Positions 3,414-61,246 of a DNA stretch of 64,000 nt are shown one piece after another. Both the position numbers and the translations under genes were made by a program. The stretch covers positions 166,446-230,445 of the IMG/VR virus record IMGVR_UViG_3300044974_001280; one strand, given 5' to 3'. Below the pieces are notes generated by a model. That model worked only from the letters and a program-made list of their open reading frames with translations, was not told the DNA's origin and searched no databases. Positions within the stretch are counted from its first letter, which is position 1, and each line of letters starts with the position of its first letter.

Positions 3414-4394
3414 ATGAATTATCCATTTAAAAAAATTTTCATTATAAATTGTTTTCCTTCTAGTGACTACCATTTACAAATTCTGAAAGAATGTATTGTC
3501 AGACTCAAGGGGCTTGACTACAAACTGATGGTTGTTTCACATTTACCTCTGCCCCTTGATGTGCAGAAGGAAATAGACTATTTTATTTATGATTCAGAAA
3601 ATCCACTCTTAGGATCCCATTCATTCAGTTGGTTTGCTAATTCTTTTATTAAGGCAACTCTGTGGAACATAGGTCACATGCTTGCTATCTGTAAAAATAT
3701 GGACACTAGTATTTCTGCCGCCCACCGAATGGGCTATGAGTATTTCTATTTTTTGGAATGTGACAATTTAATTTCTGAAAAAGATCTTTCTACTTTTGAT
3801 AATTTTCTGCAAGAAATGATTCATGCCGAAAAAAAAATGATCTTTCATAGATACCAATTTAACGAGGGTTACAATTATCACACTCTCTTGTTTGGAGGAA
3901 ATGCTGAATATTTTGTGCAGAAAATCAAATTACCCACAAATTATGATGCCTATCATGCCTTTAATATCACTGGTATTCTCGAAAGAGATTTTTATGAGCA
4001 TTTGGGTGTAAATGAATCTGATTTTTTGATTAAGGAATGTTACGAAGATGGTGCTATGGAAGGATTTAGAACTAGCGAGATGAATAGAATTTCCGCTATT
4101 GGGATAGTGTGTGAAGTCCTCCCATCTCAAACTGGCTACTATCTTTTTTTAATGAACAACACCTCAAGAGAAATAATATATTACGTCGGAGAGAATCAAA
4201 TTGTTCTTACACTTGGGGGTTATTGGTACTGCCCAGCCTCTGAAAAAATGGAAGTTCGAATCGTGGATGGCAAATATTCCTTAGAAAAAAGATTCGAATT
4301 GACCGAAGAGAACGAAAAGTTTTACAGTGCCAAAGGATTTTTAGAACTGTATGAGTTTGCAGATTTAAACGGCGGATATGGTTCTATCTATTAA
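3414..4394 (+). CDS. Putative glycosyltransferase-like protein (paralog of 9477 and 13607)
   Basis: VSHLPLP..DYFIYDSENP, YFLECD; lies in the sugar-modification cluster. Confidence 0.5.
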   Translation: MNYPFKKIFIINCFPSSDYHLQILKECIVRLKGLDYKLMVVSHLPLPLDVQKEIDYFIYDSENPLLGSHSFSWFANSFIKATLWNIGHMLAICKNMDTSISAAHRMGYEYFYFLECDNLISEKDLSTFDNFLQEMIHAEKKMIFHRYQFNEGYNYHTLLFGGNAEYFVQKIKLPTNYDAYHAFNITGILERDFYEHLGVNESDFLIKECYEDGAMEGFRTSEMNRISAIGIVCEVLPSQTGYYLFLMNNTSREIIYYVGENQIVLTLGGYWYCPASEKMEVRIVDGKYSLEKRFELTEENEKFYSAKGFLELYEFADLNGGYGSIY

Positions 4395-4408
4395 TTTAAT
4401 ATCTCTTC

Positions 4409-4615
4409 TTACAGGCCATTCAATCTGGAGATCTCCTGTTTTAGCTGCGAAACCACCAAAGTGTGATGCTCTTCTAATTTTTCCAGCTCTTTATTTAGAT
4501 CTTCTACATGAGCTTTTAACCGACCGAGAATTTCACTCTTTTTCTCAGGGTCTTGGTTCAGCTCCAGATCTAGAATTAAATTCTTGATCCGATTGGTCCA
4601 CTTGTTAACTTCCAT
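4409..4615 (-). CDS. Hypothetical coiled-coil protein
   Basis: Fills the gap between plus-strand genes; A-rich leader. Confidence 0.6.
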   Translation of the reverse strand: MEVNKWTNRIKNLILDLELNQDPEKKSEILGRLKAHVEDLNKELEKLEEHHTLVVSQLKQEISRLNGL

Positions 4616-4703
4616 TGTTTTTTTTTACAAATTTAAGAAATAATTCGAAATCATTTCTTTCTTTTTCATAAAAGGTCCATATTTAATTTGACTGACAAAT
4701 CTC

Positions 4704-5090
4704 TTGGAACCACCTATTATATATCATGTACCCTCCTGCGATGAGTGCAACATCCCTAAAGGATGGGGTCATGAGGTTGTCTTCGAAAATAACGAACTGT
4801 ATTGTGGAAAACTTCTATGTTTTAAGGGAGGAGCCAAATTTTCAATGCACTATCATTTGATCAAAGATGAAACTTGGTACGTAAAGGAAGGCACTTTTAT
4901 TTATCGGTATATAGACACCCGCAACGCAGAAGTGGTTGAAAAAAATTTAATAGAAGGTGATTCGGTCAGACAAATGCCCGGCCAACCACATCAACTGGAA
5001 GCAATAACGGATGGGATAATCTTCGAGGTTTCCACCCAACACTTTGACGAGGATTCTTATCGTGTTTGGAAAGGTGATTCACAAAAATAG
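4704..5090 (+). CDS. Cupin-domain protein (sugar isomerase-like)
   Basis: KGWGHE, YCGKLL, SMHYHLIKDETWYV, PGQPHQL, EVSTQH. Confidence 0.85.
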   Translation: MEPPIIYHVPSCDECNIPKGWGHEVVFENNELYCGKLLCFKGGAKFSMHYHLIKDETWYVKEGTFIYRYIDTRNAEVVEKNLIEGDSVRQMPGQPHQLEAITDGIIFEVSTQHFDEDSYRVWKGDSQK

Positions 5091-5107
5091 AAATTGAGTA
5101 GAGAAAA

Positions 5108-5893
5108 ATGAGCTCCGTTACCGTCATAATTCCAAATTACAACTTCTCTGAATTTCTTGATACGACTCTTTTTTCCGTTTTTTCGCAGATCACCAATTTC
5201 GACGTGCAAGTATTAGTGGGGGATGATTCTTCTCAAGATCAGAGCGCTGGTATTTTAACACGGTTCAAAAAATTTTACGGGCAGGACAAATTCGACTTTT
5301 TTATCAACACAGAAAATAAGGGAGAAGTAGAAACAGTTAAAAGATTACTTTCTAAAGCTAAAGGAAATTATATAGCCTATCTTGATGGTGATGACTATTG
5401 GATAGATCCTTATAAATTACAGAAACAATTTGATTTTCTTGAGAGTAATCCAGAATTTTCCGCGTCTTCTACCGGTTATTTAACTTTAGAAGGAGAGTAT
5501 GGATTTTGTCCACATCCAGAAGGAGATTTATTTTTTGGAGTTCCCGAAGAATTTATGGATAAAAATTTCACCTCCCCTGAATTTATTTCTACCGGCAGGA
5601 ACTGTGTATATGCATCCTCCCGTTTTTTTAGAAATTATGAGGATCTTTTTCAGCCTTACTTTTTCGAATTTCCGTATTCAGATTGGCCCATGAATTATGA
5701 ATTAAGCTTAAGGGGTAAGATTAACTACGATCATTACCCTAGCTACATTTATAGGAAACATTCGAATTCTTTAACTCATCCTAAAGAAATAGAAAAAGTG
5801 GATGAAACAAGTGAAAAAGAATGGCTTGATCAAAAGTCCCTGATTTTTACCAGGAGAAAAGAAGAATTTCAGAAAAATCAGAATAAACAATAG
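5108..5893 (+). CDS. Glycosyltransferase family 2
   Basis: VIIPNYN, GDDSSQD, YLDGDDYW. Confidence 0.9.
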   Translation: MSSVTVIIPNYNFSEFLDTTLFSVFSQITNFDVQVLVGDDSSQDQSAGILTRFKKFYGQDKFDFFINTENKGEVETVKRLLSKAKGNYIAYLDGDDYWIDPYKLQKQFDFLESNPEFSASSTGYLTLEGEYGFCPHPEGDLFFGVPEEFMDKNFTSPEFISTGRNCVYASSRFFRNYEDLFQPYFFEFPYSDWPMNYELSLRGKINYDHYPSYIYRKHSNSLTHPKEIEKVDETSEKEWLDQKSLIFTRRKEEFQKNQNKQ

Positions 5894-5898
5894 AATCA

Positions 5899-6147
5899 AT
5901 GGAGACGAAAAATCACATTATTAATTCTCTCAAAAAAAGGCATCAGCTTTACACTGGATTACACGATGAGCAAATTAAGAAAGATCACCTCTGGGTGCTG
6001 AACCATCCCTTAAAAGGCTCGGTTAAAAAAGAATGGACTGATTTTGGGGTAAATTTAATTATGGCTGAAATGGGCTTGGATCAGAGATCCGCCGAGATTG
6101 AGATGTCTTTCTTGGAGCAAGAGTACGAATCTTTAGCCTCTAGATAG
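5899..6147 (+). CDS. Hypothetical protein
   Basis: ORF in a co-directional run. Confidence 0.65.
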   Translation: METKNHIINSLKKRHQLYTGLHDEQIKKDHLWVLNHPLKGSVKKEWTDFGVNLIMAEMGLDQRSAEIEMSFLEQEYESLASR

Positions 6148-6190
6148 GTTCACGACACCCAGATTGGATATATAAAGGAAAAAATATCCA

Positions 6191-6778
6191 ATGCTATCAA
6201 GAATTTTACTTTTTGTCCTTTTTTTTCCTTTTTGTACATATTCACAAAGAGCATCTGTAGCGGTTAATGCGGGGGAATACTCTCTCGTTTACTCTGAAAT
6301 ATATCAGCAACCTCTAGAATTATCATACTCGGTCAGATGTACTGCGGCAAAGGAGAGCAGACAAGGATTGGATTTTTACCGGGTTGATTCCATCATTACC
6401 TCTGATCATGCGGATTACGAAAAGAATATCTGGGACAAAGGGCACCTAGCCCCGGCGGCTACTTTCAGTTGTTCTAAGGAGTCACTAGTAAGAACTTTCT
6501 CCTACCTCAACTGTGCTCTCCAACACCAAGATTTAAATCGGGGGGTTTGGAGAATTTTAGAGGCCAAAGAGAGACAATTGGTAGCAGAATTTCATCAGGT
6601 CGACGTTCTCATTAAACTAGATTTTTCAGGGTCTCCTGAAAAATTAAGTACGGGAGCAACAGTTCCAACTGGTTTTTGGAAAATCCTAACCATCGACAAG
6701 AAAGAAAAAATAACTTATTATTTTCCAAATCGTAAGCCGGCCTTTACAGATCCTAAAAAATTTCAAATAGCAAATTAA
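6191..6778 (+). CDS. Secreted DNA/RNA non-specific endonuclease (NucA/Serratia-like)
   Basis: Signal peptide; WDKGHLAPA, TFSYLNC..Q..LNRGVW..LE, VPTGFWK. Confidence 0.9.
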   Translation: MLSRILLFVLFFPFCTYSQRASVAVNAGEYSLVYSEIYQQPLELSYSVRCTAAKESRQGLDFYRVDSIITSDHADYEKNIWDKGHLAPAATFSCSKESLVRTFSYLNCALQHQDLNRGVWRILEAKERQLVAEFHQVDVLIKLDFSGSPEKLSTGATVPTGFWKILTIDKKEKITYYFPNRKPAFTDPKKFQIAN

Positions 6779-6843
6779 AAAATTTGAAACCTTGTTGGTG
6801 ATTCAATATATAAAGAAAGTTAAAACAAAAAACAAAAAAAACA

Positions 6844-7005
6844 ATGACAAAATCCCTGCTTACGCTCGCTCTCATTTCCATCCTAAGCTCCTGCGGTCCT
6901 GTAGTAGAAACTACAACTGATGAACCGGCAGTAGTTGAAGAAACCACTCCAGTTGACACTACAACAGAAGCTACCGCCCCTGTTGATACAGTTTCAGCTC
7001 AATAA
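6844..7005 (+). CDS. Small Thr/Glu-rich lipoprotein (53 aa, not in the ORF track)
   Basis: MTKSLLTLALISILSSC-GPVVETTTDEPAVVEETTPVDTTTEATAPVDTVSAQ; own promoter motif and terminator. Confidence 0.8.
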   Translation: MTKSLLTLALISILSSCGPVVETTTDEPAVVEETTPVDTTTEATAPVDTVSAQ

Positions 7006-7020
7006 GATTTCTTCTCTTCA

Positions 7021-7043
7021 ACCCAGCTTCGGCTGGGTTTTTT
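7021..7043 (+). terminator. Rho-independent terminator
   Basis: ACCCAGC-TTCG-GCTGGGT plus T run. Confidence 0.9.
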
Positions 7044-7068
7044 GTGATTAATTTACAAATTTGAACTT

Positions 7069-7701
7069 ATGCATAGATCAGAAGTGATCAATCAGATTAT
7101 CAGTACCAAAAAATTTAGCACCTACTTGGAGATAGGAGTAAGATGGCCTGAGGATTGTTACGATTTAATTCAATGCGAAGAGAAATCTGGGGTCGATCCA
7201 GGTCTAGAAAATCCTGAAAATCCGGTCAAGTATCCGTTTACCTCTGATGAATTTTTTTCCAGGCTAGAAAATAATCTGTTGGATTTACCTCCTGATTATG
7301 AGTGGGATCTTATTTTTATCGACGGATTACACCTTTCTTACCAGGTAGAAAAAGACATCTTAAATTCTTTGAATCACTTGACAGAAGAGGGAGTTATAGT
7401 TCTTCATGATTGTGATCCTTTTATGTATGAAGTAAATTACATTCGGGTCATCGAAGATTATCTTGGAGTAGCATGGAATGGAACAGTTTGGAAAACTATC
7501 TATAAGTTAAAGGCAACCAGGCCAGATCTGAATATTTGTACTGTTAATACCGACGAAGGTGTTGGACTGATCAAAAGGGAAAGCCAAGAGCTCGTTCCTT
7601 TCGATAACCCATATTTTGAGTATAAAATTTTCCAGCAAAATAGAACCAGAGATTTGAATTTAATTTCCCCTGAAAAAATATCTTCCTGGATTTTAGATTG
7701 A
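7069..7701 (+). CDS. Class I SAM methyltransferase (Methyltransf_24-like)
   Basis: YLEIGV, DLIFIDGLH, GVIVLHD, WNGTVWK. Confidence 0.85.
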   Translation: MHRSEVINQIISTKKFSTYLEIGVRWPEDCYDLIQCEEKSGVDPGLENPENPVKYPFTSDEFFSRLENNLLDLPPDYEWDLIFIDGLHLSYQVEKDILNSLNHLTEEGVIVLHDCDPFMYEVNYIRVIEDYLGVAWNGTVWKTIYKLKATRPDLNICTVNTDEGVGLIKRESQELVPFDNPYFEYKIFQQNRTRDLNLISPEKISSWILD

Positions 7702-7761
7702 AACTTAAAATCCATCGAAAACTAATTCAGATTAGGCCGTATAATTTGAAAATTCATCCCA

Positions 7762-8538
7762 TTGAAAACATTTCAAAAGCCCTCACAAGCCATCAAGTGG
7801 GCTAAGGAAAAATTGATCGATCACGGATATGTCGTACAGACCGAGAGATGGCAGGGTATACCTTCCCCTGACGACATGTGGGAAACCTTAAATACTTCTT
7901 TCTCTATGTTTGTCCCCCACACACTCGAAGAACTACGTGATGAGGTCAGACCTAATCTTCCCTGGGCGGACGATCATTTTGAAGAAAGAATCGGGGGCCA
8001 GCCGCTGAATCCACCTCCTTCTAACGAATGGTGGCCTTTCAACCAAAAGAAGAATTCCCAATTCAAAACAGAGGAGAAATTTTCTCACACTTATCCAGAA
8101 AGACTCTGGCCTAAATTTGCATCAGAAGAACCCAATTCGACCATGTTTGGCATTAGGTACAACTACGGTGACTTTGGTGATGTGATTGATTTGTTGGCAA
8201 GAGAACCTTTCACTAGACAGGCTTTTCTGCCCCTGTGGTTCCCGGAAGACACTGGATCTGTCCACGGGGAACGAGTTCCTTGTACAATCGGCTATCATTT
8301 TATGAGAAGAGCGGATTATCTACACATCGTGTATTACATCAGGTCCTGTGACTATCTCCGCCACTTTAGAGACGATATCTATATGGCTTGTCGGAAAGTT
8401 TTTTGGGTTCTAGAAAAATTGAGGGAAAGAAATCCCGAATCCTGGGGCGAGGTTAAACCTGGATTTTTTACCATGCACATCACTTCTTTGCATTGTTTCA
8501 ATAAGGAGAAAGAAGTTCTAAGACAAAATAATAAATAA
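7762..8538 (+). CDS. Thymidylate-synthase-fold enzyme, probable pyrimidine (dCMP-type) modifying enzyme
   Basis: TRQA, catalytic VPCT, RSCDYLRHFRDD (Asp where ThyA has the PFN Asn), SLHCF. Confidence 0.8.
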   Translation: MKTFQKPSQAIKWAKEKLIDHGYVVQTERWQGIPSPDDMWETLNTSFSMFVPHTLEELRDEVRPNLPWADDHFEERIGGQPLNPPPSNEWWPFNQKKNSQFKTEEKFSHTYPERLWPKFASEEPNSTMFGIRYNYGDFGDVIDLLAREPFTRQAFLPLWFPEDTGSVHGERVPCTIGYHFMRRADYLHIVYYIRSCDYLRHFRDDIYMACRKVFWVLEKLRERNPESWGEVKPGFFTMHITSLHCFNKEKEVLRQNNK

Positions 8539-8545
8539 AAAAATT

Positions 8546-9475: not shown

Positions 9476-9476
9476 C

Positions 9477-10598
9477 ATGAATTCTGATAATTTAATAGGA
9501 GAAAAAATATCAGATAAAAAGTTCTGTGTCATCATAGATGCATATCCCCAAACCACGGAGGAACAAGAAATTCTTCTGGCCAATCTAAAAATTTTTCAAC
9601 AAAATGAGATAGACGTTCTTTTAACTAGCCACCATCCATGTACTCCCGAGATTATTGAAAACACTACTTATTTTATTTTTGAAAGGAAAAACAATTATCA
9701 TTTCCTTGATTCAGACATTCTAAATTACAATCTAGAGGGAATACAAAATCCAGTTTACCTGAAATACATTCAAATAGGAAATGAAATGTTTAGAGACCAT
9801 TTGGTTGTTACCGGTTGGTCGGTTTCCATTGTCTCCCAATTTGTTAATTCGATTAAATTTTTGTGGTCAAAGGGATATGAATTTGCCTTTTATTTTGTTG
9901 GAGATTTCAAATGTCCGGATAATATTCAACAAAAATTCTCTGAAATTTTTTCGAATTTAGGGGAGCACAAAAATTACTTTATAAAAAATAATCCAAATTT
10001 TAGTAGCTGGTATTGCCCACACCTTTTTGGGTTTACTTTGGACGAAAGTTTGATTCAAAAAATTCCAAATCTCGATTTTTCGGATAATTCCAATTTTCAA
10101 AAGATTTTTCCCAATTGTGGTCTTGAAGATGTGATGCTAAAACTTTTTGGCGGGGATAATAATCTAGTTGATGAACATTCCGAGATGGATAAATTTTTCG
10201 GATTCGGAAATTGGAATACAGTAAGTTCGATCATAAAACCTGGGCCAAGCGCTTTACATTTCACCACAACTTCTTCACTATTCTGGAAGGAAGATCTATC
10301 GGATTGTTATTTACTTTTAAATGTTGAACCAGGTTGCCCTTGTAATGAAGTCAGCTTCTCCATTAAGATTATTACTGAAAATTCAGAAGAAATTTTCCAT
10401 CGCGAAATAATTCTAGGAAAGGGAGGGTGGTACAAAGAAAAATTGAATGATTTGTTTGTAGATGGGGACTCTGTAGTTTTCACAAAAAAATTACATAATA
10501 TAGAAGATGAAACATGTCAATTCACAGATTCTATAAAAATTAAAAGAGAAAACTTGTCTAAATATGCTTTGGTAAAAAATTACTATAAAATCGAATGA
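9477..10598 (+). CDS. Putative glycosyltransferase-like protein (paralog of 3414)
   Basis: IIDAYP..LLTSHHP..YFIFERKN. Confidence 0.5.
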   Translation: MNSDNLIGEKISDKKFCVIIDAYPQTTEEQEILLANLKIFQQNEIDVLLTSHHPCTPEIIENTTYFIFERKNNYHFLDSDILNYNLEGIQNPVYLKYIQIGNEMFRDHLVVTGWSVSIVSQFVNSIKFLWSKGYEFAFYFVGDFKCPDNIQQKFSEIFSNLGEHKNYFIKNNPNFSSWYCPHLFGFTLDESLIQKIPNLDFSDNSNFQKIFPNCGLEDVMLKLFGGDNNLVDEHSEMDKFFGFGNWNTVSSIIKPGPSALHFTTTSSLFWKEDLSDCYLLLNVEPGCPCNEVSFSIKIITENSEEIFHREIILGKGGWYKEKLNDLFVDGDSVVFTKKLHNIEDETCQFTDSIKIKRENLSKYALVKNYYKIE

Positions 10599-11365
10599 AA
10601 AGAAAAGAAATAAGTGTTATAATGCCGGTCTACAATTATGCTTATTTTTTAGATCGTGCTTTTTTTTCCGTTTACGTGCAAAAAATCGACTGCAATATTC
10701 ATTTTATAGCCTGCGATGACTGTTCTACAGATCAAAGTCTGGCTATTTTACACAGATTAAAAAATTTTGAAAACGAAAATTTTAAAATTTCGATATTTTC
10801 CAATAAAGAAAACAAAGGATTTATAGAAACCGTTATTTTTCTTCTCAAAAATTGTTCAACTTCTTATGTTGCTTATATAGACCCAGATGATTATTGGATA
10901 GATCCATATAAACTAAAAAAACAATTTGATTTTTTAGAAAATAATCCTGATTTTTCTCTCGTTAGCACTGGATATTTGATTAGTGAAGGAAGAAAATTGG
11001 TTCCCTCGGCGGATGGGAGCTTTTGGATTGCTGCTATGACAGAGTATAACTCCGTTTTACATCCAATTAGTGACGGAGAAATTGACAAAAAACTTTTACA
11101 TCATAGTAACTTGTGCTACTCATCATCAAGATTTTTTAGAAATTTCACTGACATTGATTTAAGTTATGTTAAAAATAAGCATTTCATAGATTGGGCTACC
11201 AATTTTGAATTATCTCTTCGCGGTAGAATAGGATATCTTGATTATCCATCATTTGTTTATGAAAAAAAAGAAGATTCAATGTCATCTAAAGCTCAAACTG
11301 AAATAACAGAAAAAGATTTAGATGAAATTAAATCGATTTTCAATCAAAAATTTCATAATTTTTAA
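10595..11365 (+). CDS. Glycosyltransferase family 2 (paralog of 5108)
   Basis: VIMPVYN, DDCSTD, IDPDDYWIDPYKL, SSRFFRN. Confidence 0.9.
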   Translation: MKRKEISVIMPVYNYAYFLDRAFFSVYVQKIDCNIHFIACDDCSTDQSLAILHRLKNFENENFKISIFSNKENKGFIETVIFLLKNCSTSYVAYIDPDDYWIDPYKLKKQFDFLENNPDFSLVSTGYLISEGRKLVPSADGSFWIAAMTEYNSVLHPISDGEIDKKLLHHSNLCYSSSRFFRNFTDIDLSYVKNKHFIDWATNFELSLRGRIGYLDYPSFVYEKKEDSMSSKAQTEITEKDLDEIKSIFNQKFHNF

Positions 11366-11376
11366 ATTTTTTAAGA

Positions 11377-12537
11377 ATGAAAAATATTCAATTATTCAAA
11401 CCTAAGTTCAGAACATCAGAAATCTGGGAACATATGCAAGAGTGTATGGAAATAGGATGGACAGGTTTAGGTTTTAAAACTCAGCAGATTGAAGAAGAAT
11501 GGAAAAAATACACCGGATTTAAGCATGCGCATTTTCTAAATTCGAACACCTCTGGTTTGCATCTTGCCTTAAAAATTTTAAAAGACGCCAATAAATGGAA
11601 AGAAGGAGACGAGATTATCACGTCCCCCTTAACTTTTGTGTCTTCAAATCACGCAATAATGTACGAAAGACTGAGACCAATCTTTGCAGACGTAGATGAA
11701 TTTCTATGTCTGGATCCAAAATCAGTAGAATCAAAAATCACCAAAAAAACCAAAGCTGTTTTATTTGTGGGAATTGGGGGTAATGCCGGGAGGTTCGATG
11801 AAATAGTAAATTTTTGCCAACGCAAAGGCCTTAAAATTATTTTAGATGCCGCACATATGGCTGGAACCTGGATAAAAAACAAAACAGAGGTTGGTGTTGG
11901 TTACTCGAAAGATCATGTTGGTTTAGATGCTGATGTTTCTATTTTTAGTTTTCAGGCGGTCAAAAATCTTCCGACCGCAGATTCGGGAATGATCTGTTTC
12001 AAGAATGAAGATTATGACGTATTAGCCAGAAAATTATCTTGGCTTGGAATTTCTAAAGACACTTACCAAAGATCACACGACAAAGGAAGTTATAAATGGG
12101 AATATGATCTCGTTGATGTTGGTTTCAAATATCATGGTAATTCTATGATGGCTTCGATGGCTTTAGTTGGTTTGAAATATCTTGAAGAGGATAACACCAG
12201 AAGAAGAGAAATCTGCCAAATGTATGAAAAGTCATTTCAATCTGCAGGCATCCAGTCAGTTAAAGTTTCTCCGTACACAGAACTTTCTTCTAGGCATTTG
12301 TATCAAATTGTTGTGGAAGAAAGAAACAAAACTATGGAATTTTTAAATATTCGTGGGATATATCCAGGAGTTCATTATCGTGATAATACCCATTATGATA
12401 TGTACAAATCACAATTTGGGTTGAATCCGAATTCATTGAACCTGAGCGAGAAAATTATTAGTTTACCTTTACATTTATTTTTAACCGATGATGATATTGA
12501 ATTTGTGATTCAAAACGTTATCGAATCACAAAAATAA
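11377..12537 (+). CDS. DegT/DnrJ/EryC1/StrS PLP-dependent sugar aminotransferase
   Basis: NSNTSGLHLAL, SPLTFVS, LDAAH, FSFQAVKNL, ISLPLH. Confidence 0.95.
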   Translation: MKNIQLFKPKFRTSEIWEHMQECMEIGWTGLGFKTQQIEEEWKKYTGFKHAHFLNSNTSGLHLALKILKDANKWKEGDEIITSPLTFVSSNHAIMYERLRPIFADVDEFLCLDPKSVESKITKKTKAVLFVGIGGNAGRFDEIVNFCQRKGLKIILDAAHMAGTWIKNKTEVGVGYSKDHVGLDADVSIFSFQAVKNLPTADSGMICFKNEDYDVLARKLSWLGISKDTYQRSHDKGSYKWEYDLVDVGFKYHGNSMMASMALVGLKYLEEDNTRRREICQMYEKSFQSAGIQSVKVSPYTELSSRHLYQIVVEERNKTMEFLNIRGIYPGVHYRDNTHYDMYKSQFGLNPNSLNLSEKIISLPLHLFLTDDDIEFVIQNVIESQK

Positions 12538-12542
12538 CATTT

Positions 12543-12947
12543 ATGACCATTCGCGAATTTCAGAAGGGAGATGAAGCTGGATTACTGGAAATCTTGAAGG
12601 AGACCTGGTACATCACAGAAATACAAGAAAACGTTTTATCTGAATGGATGACAAATAATTACAATTTTGTTGCGGTTGAAGAACAAGAAATCATAGGAAC
12701 AATTACACTCCATCTCCAAAGAAAATTAATCCGAAATGGCGGGTTAGCAGGATTCATTGAAGATGTGGCGGTGAAAGAAAAATTTAGAGGTAATAAAATT
12801 GGTTTTTTATTGGTTCAAAAAGCTTTGGAAAAAGCCAGGGATCTTGGATGTTATAAGGTTATTCTATCCTGTTTCGATGAGAGAATTAATTTCTATGAAA
12901 GATGTGGATTTTTCAGGGAGTGCAATACTATGAGAGTGGATCTTTAA
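12543..12947 (+). CDS. GNAT acetyltransferase (glucosamine-6-P N-acetyltransferase-like)
   Basis: KLIRNGG..GFIEDVAV..RGNKIG, GCYKVILSC, FYERCGF. Confidence 0.9.
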   Translation: MTIREFQKGDEAGLLEILKETWYITEIQENVLSEWMTNNYNFVAVEEQEIIGTITLHLQRKLIRNGGLAGFIEDVAVKEKFRGNKIGFLLVQKALEKARDLGCYKVILSCFDERINFYERCGFFRECNTMRVDL

Positions 12948-12957
12948 AATAAAAAAA

Positions 12958-13599
12958 ATGAACAATTCATACAACTTAAATTTAGATGGTATCATGGATG
13001 GACATCTAAAAACTTTATATAGAGGAATTATAACTGAAAAATCCCCATTTGATTACGTAATGTATCAAATGATAATTAATGAAATAAGACCCGATTTGAT
13101 AATAGAAATAGGGACTAATTATGGAGGATCGTGTCTGTATTTGGGTGATATTTTAAATAATATAGGTAAAGGTATGGTTCATACTGTGGATATTCAGGAT
13201 GAAACTTTTTTATCAAATTCCGAAGAAAAGAGGGGTTTGATTAATCGACATCCAAGAATTCAGAGATTCTTGGGAGGTTATCAAGAATACAACTTGGATT
13301 ATGCATCCTCATTTAAAAAAATTATGTTGATTGAAGATGGGTCACACAACTATAACGATGTTTTGTCTGTGATGAATAAATTCAAAGATTTAATCAGCGA
13401 AGATTCCTATATGATCGTTGAAGACGGAACTGTGAATTGGATGGGCATCGAAAAAAACTATGACGGAGGTCCTCTTAGAGCGATAGAAGAATTTTTACCA
13501 CAAAATCCACAATTCGAAATAGATAGAAAATGGTGTGATTTTTATGGTTACAATGTCACTTTTAATCCAAATGGATATTTAAAAAAAATTAATTTTTAA
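12958..13599 (+). CDS. CmcI-family (cephalosporin hydroxylase-like) O-methyltransferase
   Basis: KSPFD..YQ..I..IRPDLIIEIGTNYGGS, EDGSH, YMIVED, NPNGYL. Confidence 0.9.
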   Translation: MNNSYNLNLDGIMDGHLKTLYRGIITEKSPFDYVMYQMIINEIRPDLIIEIGTNYGGSCLYLGDILNNIGKGMVHTVDIQDETFLSNSEEKRGLINRHPRIQRFLGGYQEYNLDYASSFKKIMLIEDGSHNYNDVLSVMNKFKDLISEDSYMIVEDGTVNWMGIEKNYDGGPLRAIEEFLPQNPQFEIDRKWCDFYGYNVTFNPNGYLKKINF

Positions 13600-13606
13600 A
13601 AGAATT

Positions 13607-14533
13607 ATGAAAAAATTAGTTTTAATTAGTTCTCATTGTGATTCAGAAGAAAAAAGAAAAGTTCTAAAAATTAATTTGGAACTTTTAAGGCAAATAGACA
13701 CATCTATTTTGCTTTATTCGTCTATTCATCTGGAAAGAGACATTCTAAACTTAGTTGATTTTTATTTTTTCAACCCAAATAACCCATTAAAAGAGGATTC
13801 TTCTAACCTTTTTTGGAAAGAAGAATTTTTTGGAGCGAAAAAAATTAAATTTTACAGATTTTGGAGAAATAACCGTTTTGCTGGGTTTTCTCAGGTTCTG
13901 AAATTAGTTCAACTTGCAAGGATTCTAAATTATGACATGAATTATTTTATGCTATATGATTTGGTCATCGATAATCAAATTTTAAATTTCATCAAATACA
14001 AAAACCAAGAATCTTTTTTTGCTTTTAGAACAACCGAAAATGGAAAAAAATTAATTAATGATTGTGCTTCCCAATTTTTTTCCGTCTCACAATCAAAATT
14101 AGAAAATCTAGAATCTGAATTTATTTGGGAAAGATGTTTGGAGTTTGATTGTGCGGAACACTTTTGGGCAGATCTTGCCCAAAAAATTAATGTTTCAATT
14201 AACAGGGATTTTATTATCGAAGATCATATTTACACTTTTCGTAATTGGCACGAAGATTTTTACAATTATTCTCCCTGGCAGGAATTCAAAATTTATTTCT
14301 CCAAAAATGTTGGCACCGCAGATCCCCAACACTGTTTGGTTTACGATGTGAAACAACCCTTGGAAATCTTTATAAGAAAGGATAACGATATCCAAAAGAT
14401 GACAATATCAGAGTTCCAACAATTTGAGATTGATCCTAGTTTACAAAAATTCGAGTTTTGGAGAAATGGTAAAATTTTTGACGTTTTGGATCAAGCCGAA
14501 AAGTTTCCAGGAGGAGGATGGGAATTTGTATGA
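13607..14533 (+). CDS. Putative glycosyltransferase-like protein (paralog of 3414)
   Basis: LISSHC..LLYSSIH..DFYFFNPNNP, MLYD. Confidence 0.5.
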   Translation: MKKLVLISSHCDSEEKRKVLKINLELLRQIDTSILLYSSIHLERDILNLVDFYFFNPNNPLKEDSSNLFWKEEFFGAKKIKFYRFWRNNRFAGFSQVLKLVQLARILNYDMNYFMLYDLVIDNQILNFIKYKNQESFFAFRTTENGKKLINDCASQFFSVSQSKLENLESEFIWERCLEFDCAEHFWADLAQKINVSINRDFIIEDHIYTFRNWHEDFYNYSPWQEFKIYFSKNVGTADPQHCLVYDVKQPLEIFIRKDNDIQKMTISEFQQFEIDPSLQKFEFWRNGKIFDVLDQAEKFPGGGWEFV

Positions 14534-15519
14534 AAAGAGCTTTTATTACACATGCCACTGAAAATTATCTAGACATAGCCAAAAATTTAGCTACAAGTAT
14601 AGAACTCTTCTCTAAATTTCCTATTATTGTTTGCGGTGTAAATTGCTCTCCTGATGCGTCCCTTTTCTTTAAAGGACTGGAAAAAGTTATCTTTAGAAAT
14701 TTAGATCTAGAACTGGATGAAGACTACCTAGATAATTTTACTCATCAAGCTAATGGTAATTTTTACGTTACCAGAGAAAATCCAAAAATTTATAAAATTT
14801 TATGTGCTAAGACTATGGCTATGCAGCTGGCTTTAGAAGAAGGTTTCGAAGAGCTCTGCTACTTAGATTCGGATTGTATAGCTTCTCCTATAATCGACGA
14901 AATGTTCGATTGGATGCCCATCGTAAAAGACTACCCAGTTTGCACGGAGGGCATTCATCAATATATGATCATAGTCGAGCCAAATGGGTTTGAAAGAGGA
15001 AATCCATTTGAAGGGTGCTGGCCAAAGGCCGATTTAACCAAAACCCTAGAATGGCCTTTAATGCAATTTTTAGAAATGCCTGCGGAATCTAGGGGAACCT
15101 ACAGAACAACCAACGTTATACTCTGTAATTCATCTTGTTTGAATTTTGTTAAAACATGGAGGGAATTCTGTTTTCTGCTTCCCAAATTGAAAATTAGTTT
15201 ATCTAGGGTTGCCGCTTTTCACGAAGAGACAATCTACAACGTTTTATCGTGGAAAAAAACCAACGAAGGATTTCCACTATGCTATATAAATTTAAGAGAT
15301 GGGATCAACACGGTTTGTCATTTTTATGAAGAGGGACATCCAGGATTTTCCACCTGGATGTCGGAGGAAAATAAGGACTATTCTCTTAATTTTTATAGAA
15401 TTCCTCCTTCTAAAAGGGACATCAAGGTTCTCCACGGCGAGAAAAGACCGGAAGAATTTCTGAAAATTTTAGATTATTTGAAACATCTCCAGCAATCTAA
15501 TTATTTTAACACTTTATAA
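14530..15519 (+). CDS. GT-A nucleotide-diphospho-sugar transferase
   Basis: FITHATENY, YLDSD, EETIYN, VLHGEK; ATGA overlap with the previous gene. Confidence 0.7.
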   Translation: MKRAFITHATENYLDIAKNLATSIELFSKFPIIVCGVNCSPDASLFFKGLEKVIFRNLDLELDEDYLDNFTHQANGNFYVTRENPKIYKILCAKTMAMQLALEEGFEELCYLDSDCIASPIIDEMFDWMPIVKDYPVCTEGIHQYMIIVEPNGFERGNPFEGCWPKADLTKTLEWPLMQFLEMPAESRGTYRTTNVILCNSSCLNFVKTWREFCFLLPKLKISLSRVAAFHEETIYNVLSWKKTNEGFPLCYINLRDGINTVCHFYEEGHPGFSTWMSEENKDYSLNFYRIPPSKRDIKVLHGEKRPEEFLKILDYLKHLQQSNYFNTL

Positions 15520-15520
15520 C

Positions 15521-16255
15521 ATGGATCTTTCTTTGGTTGTTCACACGTGTGATTCGTACCATCAGTTTTGGTTTGGTATGTTGTATTCCTTAGACCTGTA
15601 CTGGGATTTTGAAAAAATCCCTGTTTATTGGGCATCCGAAGAACGGAATGTCAAGGATTTTGAACTTTCGTGCAGGGGTCACCTCTTCAAGCCTAACTCC
15701 GCGATGCAAAGCATTTTGACCGGAAAGACGGATAAAAATGGATTTTCCACCAGAATGAAAAAAACCTTATCCGAAATTACCTCAAAATGGATCATTTATC
15801 TCCAGGAAGATATGTGGCTAAAATCTTCTTTTCCCTATCCCGTTTTAGAACAACTTTTGCTGTTCGCAGAAGTCCAAAAGGCGGAATCCATCAAGATTCA
15901 CACCAAATTACACTATTACGATGCCTACCGCCTAGATCCTACCCCTTACGTCATTAACAAGGTTAGGATCATGAAGCACAGTCAAGGAGAAAATTATCTC
16001 CACTCTCATAATGCAACTATCTGGAATAGAGAGTACTTAATCCAAAACATTGTTGATGGAGAAGATCCCTGGACAAACGAGGTTGAAGGGTCTAAAAGAA
16101 TGAGCAGCAAAGTTCACAATCATTATCACTATAACGTCCACTGGTATTCCCAGCCTGGAGTTTGTGATAAGGGCCAACCTTCAGCAGAGTATTACCTTAT
16201 GGGTCCTATTTTAGATGACCTAATGAGCATGAAATTATCGTCCGAAAAATTTTAA
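15521..16255 (+). CDS. Glycosyltransferase-like protein
   Basis: VVHTCDSY, YLQEDMWL, ATIWNREYL, DPWTNE. Confidence 0.65.
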   Translation: MDLSLVVHTCDSYHQFWFGMLYSLDLYWDFEKIPVYWASEERNVKDFELSCRGHLFKPNSAMQSILTGKTDKNGFSTRMKKTLSEITSKWIIYLQEDMWLKSSFPYPVLEQLLLFAEVQKAESIKIHTKLHYYDAYRLDPTPYVINKVRIMKHSQGENYLHSHNATIWNREYLIQNIVDGEDPWTNEVEGSKRMSSKVHNHYHYNVHWYSQPGVCDKGQPSAEYYLMGPILDDLMSMKLSSEKF

Positions 16256-16266: not shown

Positions 16267-16548
16267 ATGCAAATCCCCCCTAAAAGAATCAGAAAGCCAG
16301 AGGATTCTCTGATGAAACATTATCAGGAACAATACGTCAGAAATCAAAACAAGTGGATTCGAAGATCCAAACTCTTGCCAGAACACTTAGATCAAGAATT
16401 TCTATTGGAAGGTGAAAAATACTGTCTTCGGGGTAGTACCAGTCCCGTTCAAGTTGTGGTTGAAAAAAAATCCACCTCCGAATACTTTATCATGTCCATT
16501 GATCCCGTTACAAAATCAATTTTAGGAGAGCCAGAAGTTGAAGATTAA
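16267..16548 (+). CDS. Hypothetical protein
   Basis: Co-directional ORF. Confidence 0.65.
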   Translation: MQIPPKRIRKPEDSLMKHYQEQYVRNQNKWIRRSKLLPEHLDQEFLLEGEKYCLRGSTSPVQVVVEKKSTSEYFIMSIDPVTKSILGEPEVED

Positions 16549-26317: not shown

Positions 26318-26413
26318 TGAAAGTTATACTCTTAGATATTCAAAATAGTTGAGGTTGGTAATTTTTCTAAAAAATTTTGTTTTTAGTTACAAAATGTATA
26401 TATTTGCACCATT

Positions 26414-27130: not shown

Positions 27131-27139
27131 ACCTTTGAT

Positions 27140-27787: not shown

Positions 27788-27974
27788 AACATTCTCCTGC
27801 ATCCTACTTGGATTAGCATTTTCAGAACTAATGAAGTTTAGTTTCTCGTTAATGAATATGCCATCTACCATTGCTTTTTTCTTCGGAGTAATAACCTTAT
27901 TTATTGGTATTTATTTTTTATTTTTAACCTTACAATTCATTTTTAAACCAAAAACCACAACAAAACAAAACTAA
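27768..27974 (+). CDS. Two-TM membrane protein
   Basis: Two hydrophobic segments. Confidence 0.65.
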   Translation: MKNILIKTFSCILLGLAFSELMKFSFSLMNMPSTIAFFFGVITLFIGIYFLFLTLQFIFKPKTTTKQN

Positions 27975-27988
27975 AAAAACAAAAAACT

Positions 27989-60250: not shown

Positions 60251-60324
60251 GAAATTTTTTTTCTTTATATATCGTTTTTTTCCCAGCGTTGAGACGAATT
60301 TCTGATATATAAAGTAAAAACTCT

Positions 60325-61167: not shown

Positions 61168-61188
61168 AATAGAGATCTGAAACAATAT

Positions 61189-61220: not shown

Positions 61221-61246
61221 AGTATGAAAAAATCATCCATTCACCT

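What the first reader, a model, noticed from the sequence alone, without database searches (positions are those of the whole stretch)
3414..16255. Candidate novel hypermodification pathway: TS-fold enzyme embedded in an amino-/acetyl-/methyl-sugar transfer cluster
Seen: two GT2 paralogs, two further GT-A-like proteins, three unannotated paralogs, a cupin, adjacent DegT aminotransferase, GNAT and CmcI genes, and FkbM and Methyltransf_24 methylases, all around the TS-like gene. Established: DegT plus GNAT build N-acetylated amino sugars, and CmcI/FkbM enzymes O-methylate. Inference: either DNA cytosines carry an elaborate sugar (anti-restriction/anti-CRISPR), or the cluster glycosylates virion or host-surface proteins and the TS-like gene is a bystander. 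Sequence alone cannot separate these.
Basis: inference. Interest (0 to 1): 0.72.

Follow-up and report, generated by a model that had tools for sequence, protein, structure and literature searches.

The report
Phage glycan island beside cytosine-modifying enzyme
A lake-water jumbo phage carries a real, portable block of sugar-building and sugar-transfer genes that most likely decorates its own virion proteins, while the thymidylate-synthase-like gene inside the block is a separate, conserved enzyme that probably modifies cytosine nucleotides, not a proven partner of the sugar genes.

Summary
The gene cluster is real. The TS-like protein belongs to an uncharacterised clade with the cytosine signature: Asp205 at ThyA N177, Thr175 at H147, Asp197 kept, and an invariant Arg171 at L143. 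It probably makes a C5-modified dCMP. Linkage to the sugar genes is weak. About 70 related loci carry the TS-like gene without sugar genes. It is GC-typical backbone, whereas the sugar genes are AT-rich cargo. The same sugar genes occur, in the same order or fused, in unrelated viral contigs with no TS-like gene, once between giant collagen-like fibre genes. In other viruses they are joined to GT4/GT9 genes, which in this phage sit in a second glyco-locus (with sulfotransferase and APS kinase) between a virion repeat protein and the head-closure/terminase genes. Best reading (about 0.55): a modular cytoplasmic glycan pathway for virion proteins, with the TS-like gene a neighbour by one ancestral insertion. 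DNA sugar hypermodification is not excluded (about 0.25). Only mass spectrometry or native long reads can decide.

The parts
3414..4394 (+). A326: unannotated protein, weak N-terminal paralog of B373 and P308 (probable GT-A-type transferase). AT-rich cargo (GC 0.344).
   Evidence: No Pfam or PHROG hit. BLASTP to P308 3e-4 and to B373 0.005. A 30%-identical homolog lies in the TS-less island L121. GC.
4704..5090 (+). Cupin_2 protein. Possible sugar isomerase/epimerase or small oxygenase; subfamily unresolved.
   Evidence: PF07883 7.5e-7. No NCBIfam hit and no clear PDB match. Conserved at 72-85% in every island-bearing relative.
5108..5893 (+). GT2a: soluble family-2 (GT-A) glycosyltransferase, paralog of GT2b.
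   Evidence: PF00535 4e-19. 42% identical to GT2b. PDB sequence hits include chondroitin synthase, SpsA and TarP. No TM segment. Appears split in population variant L087.
5899..6147 (+). s82: small conserved protein of unknown function that travels with the cupin.
   Evidence: No family hit. Homologs in L004, L006, L017/18, L093, L095, L101.
6191..6778 (+). Endonuclease_NS (Serratia-type beta-beta-alpha-Me nuclease) with a signal-peptide-like N-terminus. It is the most conserved neighbour of the TS-like gene across the clade and is not a sugar gene.
   Evidence: PF01223 7e-22. DKGH motif aligned to the Serratia nuclease DRGH. N-terminus MLSRILLFVLFFPFCTYSQ. Adjacent to the TS-like gene in L009/10, L017/18, L019, L021/22/25/77 and the P0044 context.
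7020..7039 (+). Intrinsic-terminator-like hairpin (8-bp stem, 5 GC pairs, T-run) separating the upstream unit (A326..EndoNS) from the MT24..s93 unit.
   Evidence: Consensus scan only; not verified by transcript data.
7069..7701 (+). Methyltransf_24 class-I SAM methyltransferase (probable sugar O-methyltransferase).
   Evidence: PF13578 8e-8. Weak PHROG 'DNA methyltransferase' 2.7e-10. The same family occurs in TS-less sugar islands L102, L110, L112, L115.
7762..8538 (+). TS-fold enzyme (P0001, 258 aa) of an uncharacterised phage clade: Cys174 nucleophile, Thr175, Arg171, Asp197, Asp205. Predicted cytosine-specific C5-modifying dCMP enzyme. Backbone gene (GC 0.432).
   Evidence: Residue rules from PMC13326640 and PMC8670742.
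8546..9475 (+). FkbM-family methyltransferase.
   Evidence: PF05050 6e-13. TIGR01444 6.5e-24.
9477..10598 (+). B373: virus-specific GT-A glycosyltransferase with a C-terminal beta-sandwich domain.
   Evidence: 44 homologs, none with a Pfam domain except one GT92 fusion. AF2 pLDDT 88.6. GT-A matches at Z about 12, including the PBCV-1 capsid glycosyltransferase A64R; XT1 by Foldseek at 1e-5. Homologs in TS-less islands L114 and L115.
10595..11365 (+). GT2b: soluble family-2 glycosyltransferase. Most AT-rich gene of the island (GC 0.288).
   Evidence: PF00535 8e-20.
11377..12537 (+). DegT-family PLP sugar aminotransferase, closest to UDP-sugar 4-aminotransferases (ArnB, PseC) but below their equivalog cut-offs.
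   Evidence: PF01041 8e-73. NCBIfam ArnB 5e-58 and PseC 6e-57. PDB ArnB 3e-43. 68-74% identical copies in TS-less loci L114, L115, L121-L126.
12543..12947 (+). GNAT N-acetyltransferase, presumed partner of DegT.
   Evidence: PF00583 5e-20. The DegT-GNAT pair is contiguous in L121/L122.
12958..13599 (+). CmcI / rhamnosyl-O-methyltransferase-like methyltransferase.
   Evidence: PF04989 3e-32. NF045824 3e-26, below cut-off. 98% identical in L006, where the TS-like gene is 93%, which shows mosaic exchange.
13607..14533 (+). P308: unannotated, weak N-terminal paralog of A326 and B373.
14518..15519 (+). P333: GT-A (GT8/Nucleotid_trans-like) transferase with an invariant DxD motif. In other viruses it is the N-terminal domain of ~1030-aa P333-GT4-GT9 fusion proteins.
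15521..16255 (+). P244: virus-specific protein of unknown function that travels with P333.
   Evidence: Homologs at 51-64% in L004, L006, L114, L115.
16267..16548 (+). s93: first backbone gene downstream. It marks the right edge of the variable interval (TS-like to s93) into which the cargo is inserted.
   Evidence: Directly follows the TS-like gene in L007, L011, L012, L014, L019.

Best explanation
The island (window 3414-16255, minus the TS-like and nuclease genes) is a portable module of soluble cytoplasmic enzymes. It tailors a nucleotide-activated sugar: a host-supplied 4-keto sugar is aminated by DegT, N-acetylated by GNAT, possibly isomerised by the cupin, and O-methylated by CmcI, FkbM or MT24. 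Up to about seven GT-A-type transferases (GT2a, GT2b, B373, P333, probably A326 and P308, possibly P244) then assemble a methylated N-acetyl-amino-sugar oligosaccharide. The acceptor is most likely protein: the phage's own repeat-rich virion components. The island would work together with a second glyco-locus (GT4, FkbM, sulfotransferase, APS kinase, GT4, GT9) that lies in the structural/packaging module. The TS-like gene is a separate backbone gene. It is a cytosine-specific TS-fold enzyme that most likely converts dCMP to a C5-modified dCMP (5-hydroxymethyl- or 5-methyl-dCMP) for the phage's DNA. It sits inside the island because one ancestral insertion landed in the variable interval next to it and has since diversified in place. 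SHOWN: domain identities, folds, the active-site signature, the distribution across loci, the fusions and neighbourhoods, and the composition. INFERRED: the sugar chemistry, the protein acceptor, the product of the TS-like enzyme, and the single-insertion history.
For: (1) The TS-like gene occurs without sugar genes. Of 77 related IMG/VR loci, only about 8 (W/L002/L003, L004/5, L006, L017/18) have sugar genes within 10 kb. The jumbo relatives L007-L016, L019 and L020 keep TS-like-s93-f11-h133 with a Metallophos gene upstream. About 48 small-phage loci place it among P-loop kinases, dCMP deaminase, dUTPase and PolA/PolB. (2) The sugar genes occur without a TS-like gene. L114 (254-kb contig) has B373 49%, DegT 74%, P333 55% and P244 51% in the window's order, with no TS HMM hit and no other shared genes. 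L115 has P244 61%, DegT 68%, B373 47% and P333 48%. L102-104 have GT9, MT24, GT2, DegT, PglD-type acetyltransferase, a P333-GT4-GT9 fusion and FkbM. L121-126 have DegT at 69-70%. No TS-like gene was found in any of these loci or in the held records. (3) A fusion and neighbourhood link to structural genes. P333 is fused to GT4 and GT9 domains whose homologs (32-40%) in this phage are G000 10610-11674 and 11671-12855. In L121/L122 the GT9 gene directly abuts DegT-GNAT. That second locus lies between a 1384-aa virion structural/tail-spike repeat protein (PHROG about 1e-200) and the head-closure and large-terminase genes, and it adds a sulfotransferase and an APS kinase. In L096/L110 the MT24-GT34 and P333-GT4-GT9 genes lie between 1204-, 1442- and 2466-2733-aa proteins, the last a collagen-repeat protein. 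(4) Candidate acceptors exist: a 3778-aa protein with a TNTQTP mucin-like repeat, tail-fibre-like proteins with G-X-Y runs, and a Gly-Ser/Thr repeat at the contig start. (5) Composition: TS-like GC 0.432 versus 0.288-0.362 for the sugar genes. (6) No island protein has a TM segment, and no Wzx/Wzy/Gtr-type genes are present. (7) B373 is a generic GT-A whose matches include the PBCV-1 capsid glycosyltransferase; it is not T4 beta-GT-like. (8) Precedent: phage virion glycosylation by GTs encoded far from the structural genes (Freeman et al. 2023, as cited in PMC11256854).
Against: There is no direct evidence for any acceptor. The window island itself is 55-60 kb from the fibre genes and about 160 kb from the second glyco-locus. 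Within this clade, every island variant lies immediately beside the TS-like gene, apparently in one transcription unit with it. ThyS-adjacent GT-A clusters are a documented signature of DNA glycosylation (bioRxiv 10.1101/2023.12.21.572611). The TS-less contigs are fragments (6-49% complete), or are records I could not search whole, so a distant TS-like gene in those genomes is not excluded. The fusion argument links P333 to GT4/GT9, not every island gene. The GT4/GT9 locus's own acceptor is inferred only from its position.
Confidence: 0.55

Rival explanations
1. DNA sugar hypermodification. The TS-like enzyme makes 5-hydroxymethyl-dCMP, which is phosphorylated and incorporated into phage DNA. 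The island's GT-A enzymes then glycosylate 5hmC after replication with an N-acetylated, O-methylated amino sugar (mono- to oligosaccharide), which protects the DNA from restriction enzymes and CRISPR.
For: The TS-like enzyme has the cytosine signature: Asp205 = N177D, Thr175 at H147, and a non-hydrophobic Arg171 at L143, which would not exclude water. Its closest folds are MilA CMP hydroxymethylase and a phage dCMP hydroxylase (rules). All six or so island variants in the clade flank the TS-like gene directly, and the minimal one is cupin-s82-TSl-P333. MT24..P244 appears co-transcribed with it. Documented precedents are ThyS-associated GT-A/GT8-like clusters that add hexose, HexNAc or heptose mono- to trisaccharides to 5hmC, and the RB69/DLP3 clusters that combine a TS homolog, sugar-nucleotide synthesis and GTs. 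The phage has a dCMP deaminase and a P-loop NTPase of the family that flanks the TS-like gene in L023-L030. Rapid diversification of the island would also suit an arms race with modification-dependent nucleases.
Against: The linkage is restricted to one clade and is explicable by a single insertion into a variable interval that holds unrelated cargo elsewhere, such as an OmpA-like gene in L009/10. The same sugar genes occur in TS-less contexts, next to fibre and collagen genes, and fused or adjacent to GT4/GT9 genes of the structural-module locus. No MazG/PRA-PH-type dCTPase was found in the 230-kb record. About seven transferases plus three methylases exceeds any documented DNA glycan. All candidate GTs are acidic (net -6 to -19), which is weak evidence. 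The sugar genes differ compositionally from the TS-like gene. The product of this TS clade is unknown and could be 5-methyl-dCMP, which offers no hydroxyl group.
Confidence: 0.25
2. Host-envelope or other non-virion glycan remodelling. The island is an auxiliary 'moron' that alters host LPS, capsule, teichoic-acid-like polymers or a secreted product during infection, for example for superinfection exclusion, in the way prophage TarP or cyanophage LPS genes are interpreted.
For: The GT2s resemble polysaccharide and teichuronic/teichoic-acid enzymes (TuaG, EpsE, TarP). DegT, acetyltransferase and O-methyltransferase are classic O-antigen/capsule tailoring genes. The island is accessory, AT-rich and highly variable, like surface-glycan loci. 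Neighbouring genes encode exported or membrane proteins: the EndoNS signal peptide and the hydrophobic N-terminus of hyp130. Large GT repertoires in cyanomyoviruses are read this way (PMC12801897).
Against: There is no initiating phosphoglycosyltransferase, flippase, polymerase, Gtr-type membrane component or any TM protein among the island enzymes. No nucleotidyltransferase or 4,6-dehydratase is present either. The comparative signals point to virion fibre and structural genes rather than envelope genes.
Confidence: 0.12

Closest known systems
ThyS-associated DNA glycosylation gene clusters (T4 gp42 + alpha/beta-GT; RB69/DLP3 5hoC arabinosylation, PMC13326640; phage GT-A/GT-B clusters of Pyle et al., bioRxiv 10.1101/2023.12.21.572611)
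   Same: A TS-fold enzyme with the N177D cytosine signature lies directly next to GT-A glycosyltransferases (GT2- and GT8-like) and sugar-tailoring genes on one strand.
   Different: The TS-like protein belongs to a different clade (Arg at L143, Asp169 kept). No dCTPase was found. The GTs and the TS-like gene are not co-inherited outside one clade. The island has far more transferases and methylases than any characterised DNA pathway, and it recurs without a TS homolog next to fibre genes.
Mycobacteriophage virion glycosylation (Che8, Rita; Freeman et al. 2023, Cell Host Microbe 31:1216, as cited in PMC11256854)
   Same: Phage-encoded soluble glycosyltransferases, with methyltransferases by my recollection, are encoded away from the structural genes and glycosylate capsid and tail proteins in the cytoplasm.
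   Different: No sequence relationship was tested. This is a lake jumbo phage with two loci, amino-sugar tailoring and a sulfotransferase/APS kinase pair, and no glycoprotein has been demonstrated.
Giant-virus autonomous glycosylation machineries (PBCV-1 A64R capsid glycosyltransferase; Mimivirus fibril glycans with N-acetylated, O-methylated amino-dideoxy sugars, the latter from my own knowledge)
   Same: Virus-encoded GT-A enzymes plus aminotransferase, N-acetyltransferase and methyltransferase genes build unusual sugars for virion surface proteins. B373 matches A64R (2p6w, Z 12.2) and Mimivirus R699 (Z 10.7) among many GT-A folds.
   Different: The fold match is generic GT-A and does not mark a specific relationship. 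The host here is bacterial, and the upstream sugar-nucleotide enzymes are absent from the phage.
MilA CMP hydroxymethylase / T4 dCMP hydroxymethylase / phage HY126 dCMP hydroxylase (cytosine-specific TS-fold enzymes)
   Same: TS fold, catalytic Cys followed by Thr, and Asp at the N177 position.
   Different: Arg rather than Asp/Glu at L143. It lacks the D169N change of the flavin-dependent hydroxylases. Sequence identity is only 12-15%. The product has not been determined.

Membership tests
Canonical thymidylate synthase ThyA (dUMP to dTMP) | TS fold with a catalytic Cys (E. coli C146) | tested here: met
   AF2 model pLDDT 81.9. Foldseek E 1e-10 to 1e-12 to TS-fold enzymes. Cys174 is invariant in 63 sequences.
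Canonical thymidylate synthase ThyA (dUMP to dTMP) | Asn at position 177 (reads uracil O4/N3) and His147; score above the Pfam PF00303 gathering threshold | tested here: not met
   Asp205 is invariant and aligns to the Asp of MilA, 9iqu and the L. casei N229D mutant. Thr175 replaces His147. PF00303 scores 18.8 bits against a 24.3 cut-off.
T4-type dCMP hydroxymethylase system | N177D substitution | tested here: met
   Asp205; rule from PMC13326640 and PMC8670742.
T4-type dCMP hydroxymethylase system | Acidic residue (Asp/Glu) at the L143 position | tested here: not met
   Arg171 is invariant and aligns with the MilA Asp. It is hydrophilic, so hydroxymethylation is not excluded, but the signature differs.
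T4-type dCMP hydroxymethylase system | Accompanying dCTPase and dNMP kinase | tested here: inconclusive
   No MazG or PRA-PH family hit in the 230-kb record, which is 85% complete. A P-loop NTPase (G000 60248-60790) of the family that flanks the TS-like gene in L023-L030 is present, and so is a dCMP deaminase. Activities are unknown.
5-hydroxy-dCMP synthase (RB69 gp48 / DLP3 gp80 / HY126 AfhB) | D169N substitution, diagnostic per PMC13326640 | tested here: not met
   Asp197 is invariant in the RSCD motif.
ThyS-associated DNA glycosylation cluster | Cytosine- or hydroxymethyl-type TS homolog adjacent to glycosyltransferases | tested here: met
ThyS-associated DNA glycosylation cluster | Co-inheritance of the TS homolog and the GTs across relatives | tested here: not met
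   About 70 loci have the TS-like gene without the GTs. At least 20 loci have the GTs or DegT without a TS-like gene. The caveat is that many of those contigs are fragments.
ThyS-associated DNA glycosylation cluster | GTs specifically related to known DNA glycosyltransferases (T4 alpha/beta-GT, JGT-like GT-A) | tested here: inconclusive
   B373 is a generic GT-A and shows no T4 beta-GT match. GT2a hits TarP only weakly, at 9e-6.
ThyS-associated DNA glycosylation cluster | Glycosylated base present in virion DNA | not testable with these tools
   Only short-read assemblies were listed for this phage, and no nanopore run was listed.
Virus-encoded virion protein glycosylation system | Soluble GTs plus sugar-tailoring enzymes, without membrane export or polymerisation components | tested here: met
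   No TM segments; no Wzx, Wzy, Gtr or PGT genes.
Virus-encoded virion protein glycosylation system | Genomic association of the GT families with structural or fibre genes | tested here: met
   This holds for homologs and fusion partners: L096/L110 lie between giant collagen-like genes, and the own second locus lies between a virion repeat protein and the head-closure/terminase genes. It does not hold for the window island's own position.
Virus-encoded virion protein glycosylation system | Glycan demonstrated on a virion protein | not testable with these tools
   This needs virions and glycoproteomics.

The most novel reading that the evidence does not exclude
The phage replaces or decorates cytosine through a previously uncharacterised TS-fold clade (Asp205/Arg171). 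The island then builds, on that base, a methylated N-acetyl-amino-sugar glycan. That would be the first amino-, acetyl- and methyl-tailored, multi-residue sugar hypermodification of DNA. The glycan 'serotype' would diversify rapidly between sister phages, as the variants W, L004, L006, L017 and L095 suggest.
Probability: 0.22. Interest if true: 0.88.

Novelty: new variant of a known kind. Interest (0 to 1): 0.5.

Why it matters
Sugar-gene islands in large environmental phages are often read by default as DNA glucosylation or as host LPS modification. This case shows with comparative evidence that such an island can be a portable module linked to fibre and structural genes, even when it happens to enclose a nucleotide-modifying enzyme. 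If the virion-glycan reading is right, freshwater jumbo phages carry two-locus machinery for methylated, N-acetylated and possibly sulfated glycans on their particles. That would bear on host recognition, particle stability and grazing or immune evasion. Separately, the TS-like clade (Asp at N177, Arg at L143) is widespread in cultured Gordonia, Serratia, Yersinia, Streptomyces and Clostridium phages, where it is annotated as 'thymidylate synthase'. Its product is unknown and easy to test, and it may reveal cytosine modification in many well-studied phages.

Tried and rejected
- Megablast of the island against 50,697 phage records found no match.
- There are no tRNAs in the window.
- tblastn with the ClpB-like protein, to find cultured relatives or a host, returned only cellular-like ClpB hits and was uninformative.
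- Sequencing runs: at least 19 lake-water metagenome runs hold the phage, but all are short-read assemblies, and no nanopore run was listed. I therefore did not use read laying, because contigs cannot show base modification.
- Searches of the own genome for MazG, PRA-PH, NTP_transferase and GDP_Man_Dehyd-type dehydratase all found nothing. The phage must draw its activated keto-sugar from the host, and a dCTPase, if present, is of an unrecognised type.
- A single-protein probe of IMG/VR with P333 or B373 returned only the same phage. Alignment-based and DegT probes were needed to reach further.
- Whole-record searches of the 254-kb and 259-kb metagenome contigs behind L114 and L112 were not possible, because the records are not held.
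- The paper on Yersinia phage P744 contains nothing on DNA modification, and I found no paper characterising DNA of any phage in this TS-like clade.
- Sigma-70 promoter-like sites are not enriched (46 found versus 49 expected), so I make no promoter claims.
- I considered and dropped the idea that the adjacent nuclease degrades cytoplasmic host DNA while modified phage DNA is spared, because the protein has a signal-peptide-like N-terminus.
- The XT1 (protein Ser-xylosyltransferase) match of B373 is too weak (TM about 0.3) to use as evidence for a Gly-Ser acceptor.
- Complex prediction was not used, because no specific protein pair was claimed to bind.

Full report
**Context.** The window is the last 64 kb of a 230,445-bp IMG/VR virus record (linear, CheckV 85% complete). 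The phage recurs in at least 19 lake-water metagenome runs. Genome GC is 0.398. Genes are packed on one strand. The window also encodes a ClpB-like ATPase, a glutamine-synthetase-like protein, two RNA ligases, an R2K ATP-grasp enzyme and a HAD RNA-repair domain. The rest of the genome has a split PolB, ribonucleotide reductase, topoisomerase II, a large terminase, tail-fibre-like genes and several giant proteins. It is a jumbo tailed phage of unknown host. Megablast finds no near relative among deposited phages.

**The observation.**
- The two GT2 proteins are 42% identical.
- P333 has an invariant DxD motif and GT8/Nucleotid_trans-like features.
- B373 folds confidently (pLDDT 88.6) into a GT-A domain plus a C-terminal beta-sandwich. 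Its matches at Z about 12 include the PBCV-1 capsid glycosyltransferase, glycogenin and TarP. It does not resemble T4 beta-GT.
- The 'three paralogs' are at best A326, B373 and P308, which share weak N-terminal similarity. P244 stays unknown.
It separates A326..EndoNS from a tightly packed run MT24-TSl-FkbM-B373-GT2b-DegT-GNAT-CmcI-P308-P333-P244-s93, with gaps of -16 to 60 nt.
- None of the island proteins has a transmembrane segment.

**The TS-like enzyme.** It is not a canonical thymidylate synthase, scoring 18.8 bits against Pfam's 24.3 cut-off. Its model has a TS fold, and the best matches are MilA CMP hydroxymethylase and the phage HY126 dCMP hydroxylase. Canonical TSs and T4 dCMP hydroxymethylase score about the same.

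It belongs to a tight family: 63 distinct sequences from 77 IMG/VR loci, plus 122 deposited phage records of Gordonia, Clostridium, Mycobacterium, Serratia, Pseudomonas, Streptomyces, Brevundimonas and Yersinia phages at 40-47% identity.

Profile alignment to solved structures fixes the active-site equivalences:

| E. coli ThyA position | Query residue | Conservation in the family |
|---|---|---|
| C146 (nucleophile) | Cys174 | invariant |
| H147 | Thr175 | Thr or Ser |
| L143 | Arg171 | invariant |
| D169 | Asp197 | invariant |
| N177 | Asp205 | invariant |

I read these against the rules summarised in PMC13326640 and PMC8670742. N177D means dCMP rather than dUMP. D169 retained means it is not a flavin-type 5-hydroxy-dCMP synthase. 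A non-hydrophobic residue at L143 does not exclude water, but it is not the Asp/Glu of T4-type hydroxymethylases. I therefore predict a cytosine-specific C5 one-carbon transferase whose product (5hm-dCMP or 5m-dCMP) is undetermined. I found no experimental work on this clade.

**Linkage test, forward direction.** I mapped all window genes onto the 77 TS-like loci.
- Sugar genes accompany the TS-like gene only in the nearest relatives: identical copies L002/L003; L006 (a variant with a PglD-type acetyltransferase, a PhyH dioxygenase and an extra GT2); L004/L005 (a variant with a HAD-nucleotidyltransferase fusion, extra FkbM/TylF/Methyltransf_11 methylases and an ATP-grasp enzyme); and L017/L018 (cupin, s82, nuclease, TSl, an FkbM-GT34 fusion, P333).
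- Later probes added L095 (cupin-s82-TSl-P333) and one more variant without DNA.
- Jumbo relatives at 66-77% TS identity (L007-L016, L019, L020) keep the backbone TSl-s93-f11-h133, usually with a calcineurin-like phosphoesterase upstream, and have no sugar gene within 10 kb.
- The interval between the TS-like gene and s93 holds unrelated cargo elsewhere, for example an OmpA-like gene in L009/10.
- In about 48 small-phage loci the gene sits in a nucleotide/replication row: P-loop kinases, a second divergent gene annotated 'pyrimidine hmase' in Yersinia phage P744, dCMP deaminase, dUTPase, UDG-PolA or PolB, and a PD-(D/E)XK nuclease.
- The most conserved neighbour in the jumbo clade is the nuclease, not a transferase.

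**Linkage test, reverse direction.**
- P333 homologs (38-41%) occur in nine further viral contigs. There they form the N-terminal third of ~1030-aa P333-GT4-GT9 fusion proteins.
- L102-L104 carry a functionally equivalent island: GT9, Methyltransf_24, GT2, a DegT-like gene, a PglD-type acetyltransferase, the fusion GT and FkbM.
- In L096/L110/L111 an MT24-GT34 gene and the fusion GT lie between proteins of 1204, 1442 and 2466-2733 aa. The last is a collagen-repeat protein whose length varies between samples.
- B373 homologs lead to L114. This is a 254-kb contig with B373, DegT (74%), an acetyltransferase, a GT2, P333 (55%) and P244 (51%) in the window's order, and nothing else shared with this phage. 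They also lead to L115, a 17-gene sugar island.
- DegT homologs (69-70%) lead to L121-L126.
- The TS-family HMM hits none of these loci, and none of the 14 IMG/VR records that could be searched whole. Those records are only 6-49% complete.

**A second glyco-locus and the bridge to it.** The GT4 and GT9 domains fused to P333 elsewhere have homologs in this phage at G000 10610-11674 and 11671-12855 (32-40% identity). They belong to a locus of GT4, FkbM, sulfotransferase, APS kinase, GT4 and GT9. That locus is flanked upstream by a 1384-aa repeat protein matching virion structural/tail-spike families at about 1e-200, and downstream by head-closure and large-terminase genes. Its GT9 gene is conserved at 44-49% in the complete relatives G003 and G004, which lack P333. 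In L121/L122 the homologous GT9 gene directly abuts the DegT-GNAT pair, with GT4, FkbM and an A326-like gene nearby. So in other viruses the window island and the structural-module locus form one contiguous pathway. Plausible protein acceptors exist: a 3778-aa protein with a TNTQTP/TNTPTP mucin-like repeat, two tail-fibre-like proteins with G-X-Y runs, and a Gly-Ser/Thr repeat at the contig start.

**Composition.** The TS-like gene (GC 0.432) resembles the backbone (GlnS 0.425, h511 0.432; gene mean 0.398, sd 0.046). MT24, FkbM, B373, GT2b, DegT, GNAT, CmcI, P308, A326 and GT2a range from 0.288 to 0.362. The cupin, s82, the nuclease and P244 are backbone-like, as are the second locus and a clade-wide 414-aa GT2 gene. 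CmcI is 98% identical between this phage and L006, where the TS-like gene is only 93% identical and A326 only 47%, which indicates mosaic exchange.

**Sugar chemistry (inferred).** DegT is closest to the UDP-4-keto-sugar aminotransferases ArnB and PseC, but below their equivalog thresholds. GNAT would N-acetylate the amine. CmcI is rhamnosyl-O-methyltransferase-like. FkbM and MT24 add further methylation capacity. The cupin's role is open. The 230-kb record has no nucleotidyltransferase and no 4,6-dehydratase, so the keto-sugar nucleotide must come from the host. The sister island in L004 supplies its own HAD-nucleotidyltransferase.

**Weighing.** The DNA reading has real support: a cytosine-type TS homolog, immediate adjacency in every island variant of this clade, apparent co-transcription, and published ThyS-GT-A precedents. 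But the variants share cupin, s82, B373, P333 and P244, so their adjacency to the TS-like gene is best counted as one ancestral insertion that diversified in place, not six independent associations. Against the DNA reading stand several points:
- the two-way lack of co-inheritance;
- the compositional break;
- the fusion and neighbourhood links to fibre and structural genes;
- a transferase and methylase count well beyond any known DNA glycan;
- no recognised dCTPase.

I put the virion-protein (non-DNA) glycan pathway at about 0.55, DNA sugar hypermodification at about 0.25, host-envelope or other glycan remodelling at about 0.12, and the remainder unassigned. A separate clade-wide 414-aa GT2 protein lies between ribonucleotide reductase and topoisomerase genes. 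On position alone it is a better candidate for a DNA glycosyltransferase than anything in the island, but it was not tested.

**Verdict.** The cluster is real and interesting, but as posed (a novel DNA hypermodification pathway) it is more likely a coincidence of neighbourhood. The most valuable concrete leads are these:
- the uncharacterised Asp205/Arg171 TS-fold clade, which is testable in cultured phages;
- the two-locus virion-glycan machinery, possibly including sulfation;
- the portable island, which diversifies rapidly between sister phages.

Noticed in passing
L116:4943-12855 (= G000 4943-12855, outside the window): A second glyco-locus lies in the structural/packaging module: a weak GT2, GT4, FkbM, a sulfotransferase (PF13469 2.6e-15), an unknown 339-aa protein, APS kinase (PF01583 2e-21), GT4 and GT9. 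It is flanked by a virion repeat protein and by head-closure and terminase genes. A phage-encoded sulfotransferase plus APS kinase suggests sulfated glycans or proteins.
   Followed up: partly
L089:9297-10541 (= G000 143296-144540): A 414-aa protein with an N-terminal GT2 domain is conserved across the clade (417-445 aa in 8 relatives). It lies between ribonucleotide reductase and topoisomerase II/UvdE in the DNA-metabolism module, which makes it a positional candidate for a DNA glycosyltransferase.
   Followed up: partly
L117:4592-15928 (= G000 99591-110927): A 3778-aa protein carries a long TNTQTP/TNTPTP Thr/Pro tandem repeat (53% Ser/Thr in a 60-aa window), which is mucin-like. It is followed by two tail-fibre-like proteins with short collagen G-X-Y runs.
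   Followed up: partly
window:6191-6778: The Serratia-type non-specific nuclease next to the TS-like gene has a signal-peptide-like N-terminus and an intact DKGH motif. The nuclease/TS-like pairing is conserved in many relatives, sometimes on opposite strands. Its role is unknown; possibilities include scavenging of extracellular or periplasmic DNA, or superinfection exclusion.
   Followed up: partly
G000 60248-62195 (outside the window); L029/L030 about 8100-10800: A P-loop NTPase (f32) and an asparagine-synthase-like amidotransferase (f48; PF00733 4.5e-37) lie immediately upstream of the TS-like gene in L029/L030/L071. In this phage they occur as a pair 112 kb away from it. This may be a further step of nucleotide or base modification.
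   Followed up: no
L032:8798-9592 and homologs (family f9/f30); L079:6214-7047: In the small phages a second ~250-280-aa gene with no Pfam hit sits directly upstream of the TS-like gene. It is annotated 'pyrimidine hmase synthase' in Yersinia phage P744 and contains a Pro-Cys motif, so it may be a second divergent TS-fold protein.
   Followed up: no
L087:7443-8132: One population variant of this phage appears to have GT2a split into 177-aa and 31-aa pieces, which suggests the transferase set is not under uniform constraint.
   Followed up: no
L096:13104-20504; L110:13107-21308; L111:10651-18636: The collagen-repeat giant protein next to the TS-less GT pair varies in length between samples (2466, 2733 and 2661 aa), which indicates repeat-number polymorphism.
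   Followed up: no
L102:13807-16545: A 912-aa protein made of Hint/intein and AXH modules lies directly after the FkbM gene of a TS-less sugar island.
   Followed up: no
window:17469-18521, 25241-28849, 37062-38132: The window also encodes a glutamine-synthetase-like protein conserved with the backbone, and an RNA-repair-like set: T4 Rnl1-type ligase, R2K ATP-grasp, a HAD 'Swiss-army-knife' domain, an SPFH/Band-7 protein, and a second RNA ligase with a PHA02142 OB domain.
   Followed up: no
G003/G004/G001/G002, about 10 kb downstream of their TS-like genes (e.g. G004 170815-171645): Relatives that lack the island carry a ~780-aa GT9-containing protein about 10 kb downstream of the TS-like gene. 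The region around the TS-like gene is therefore a general accessory, glyco-gene-rich zone.
   Followed up: no
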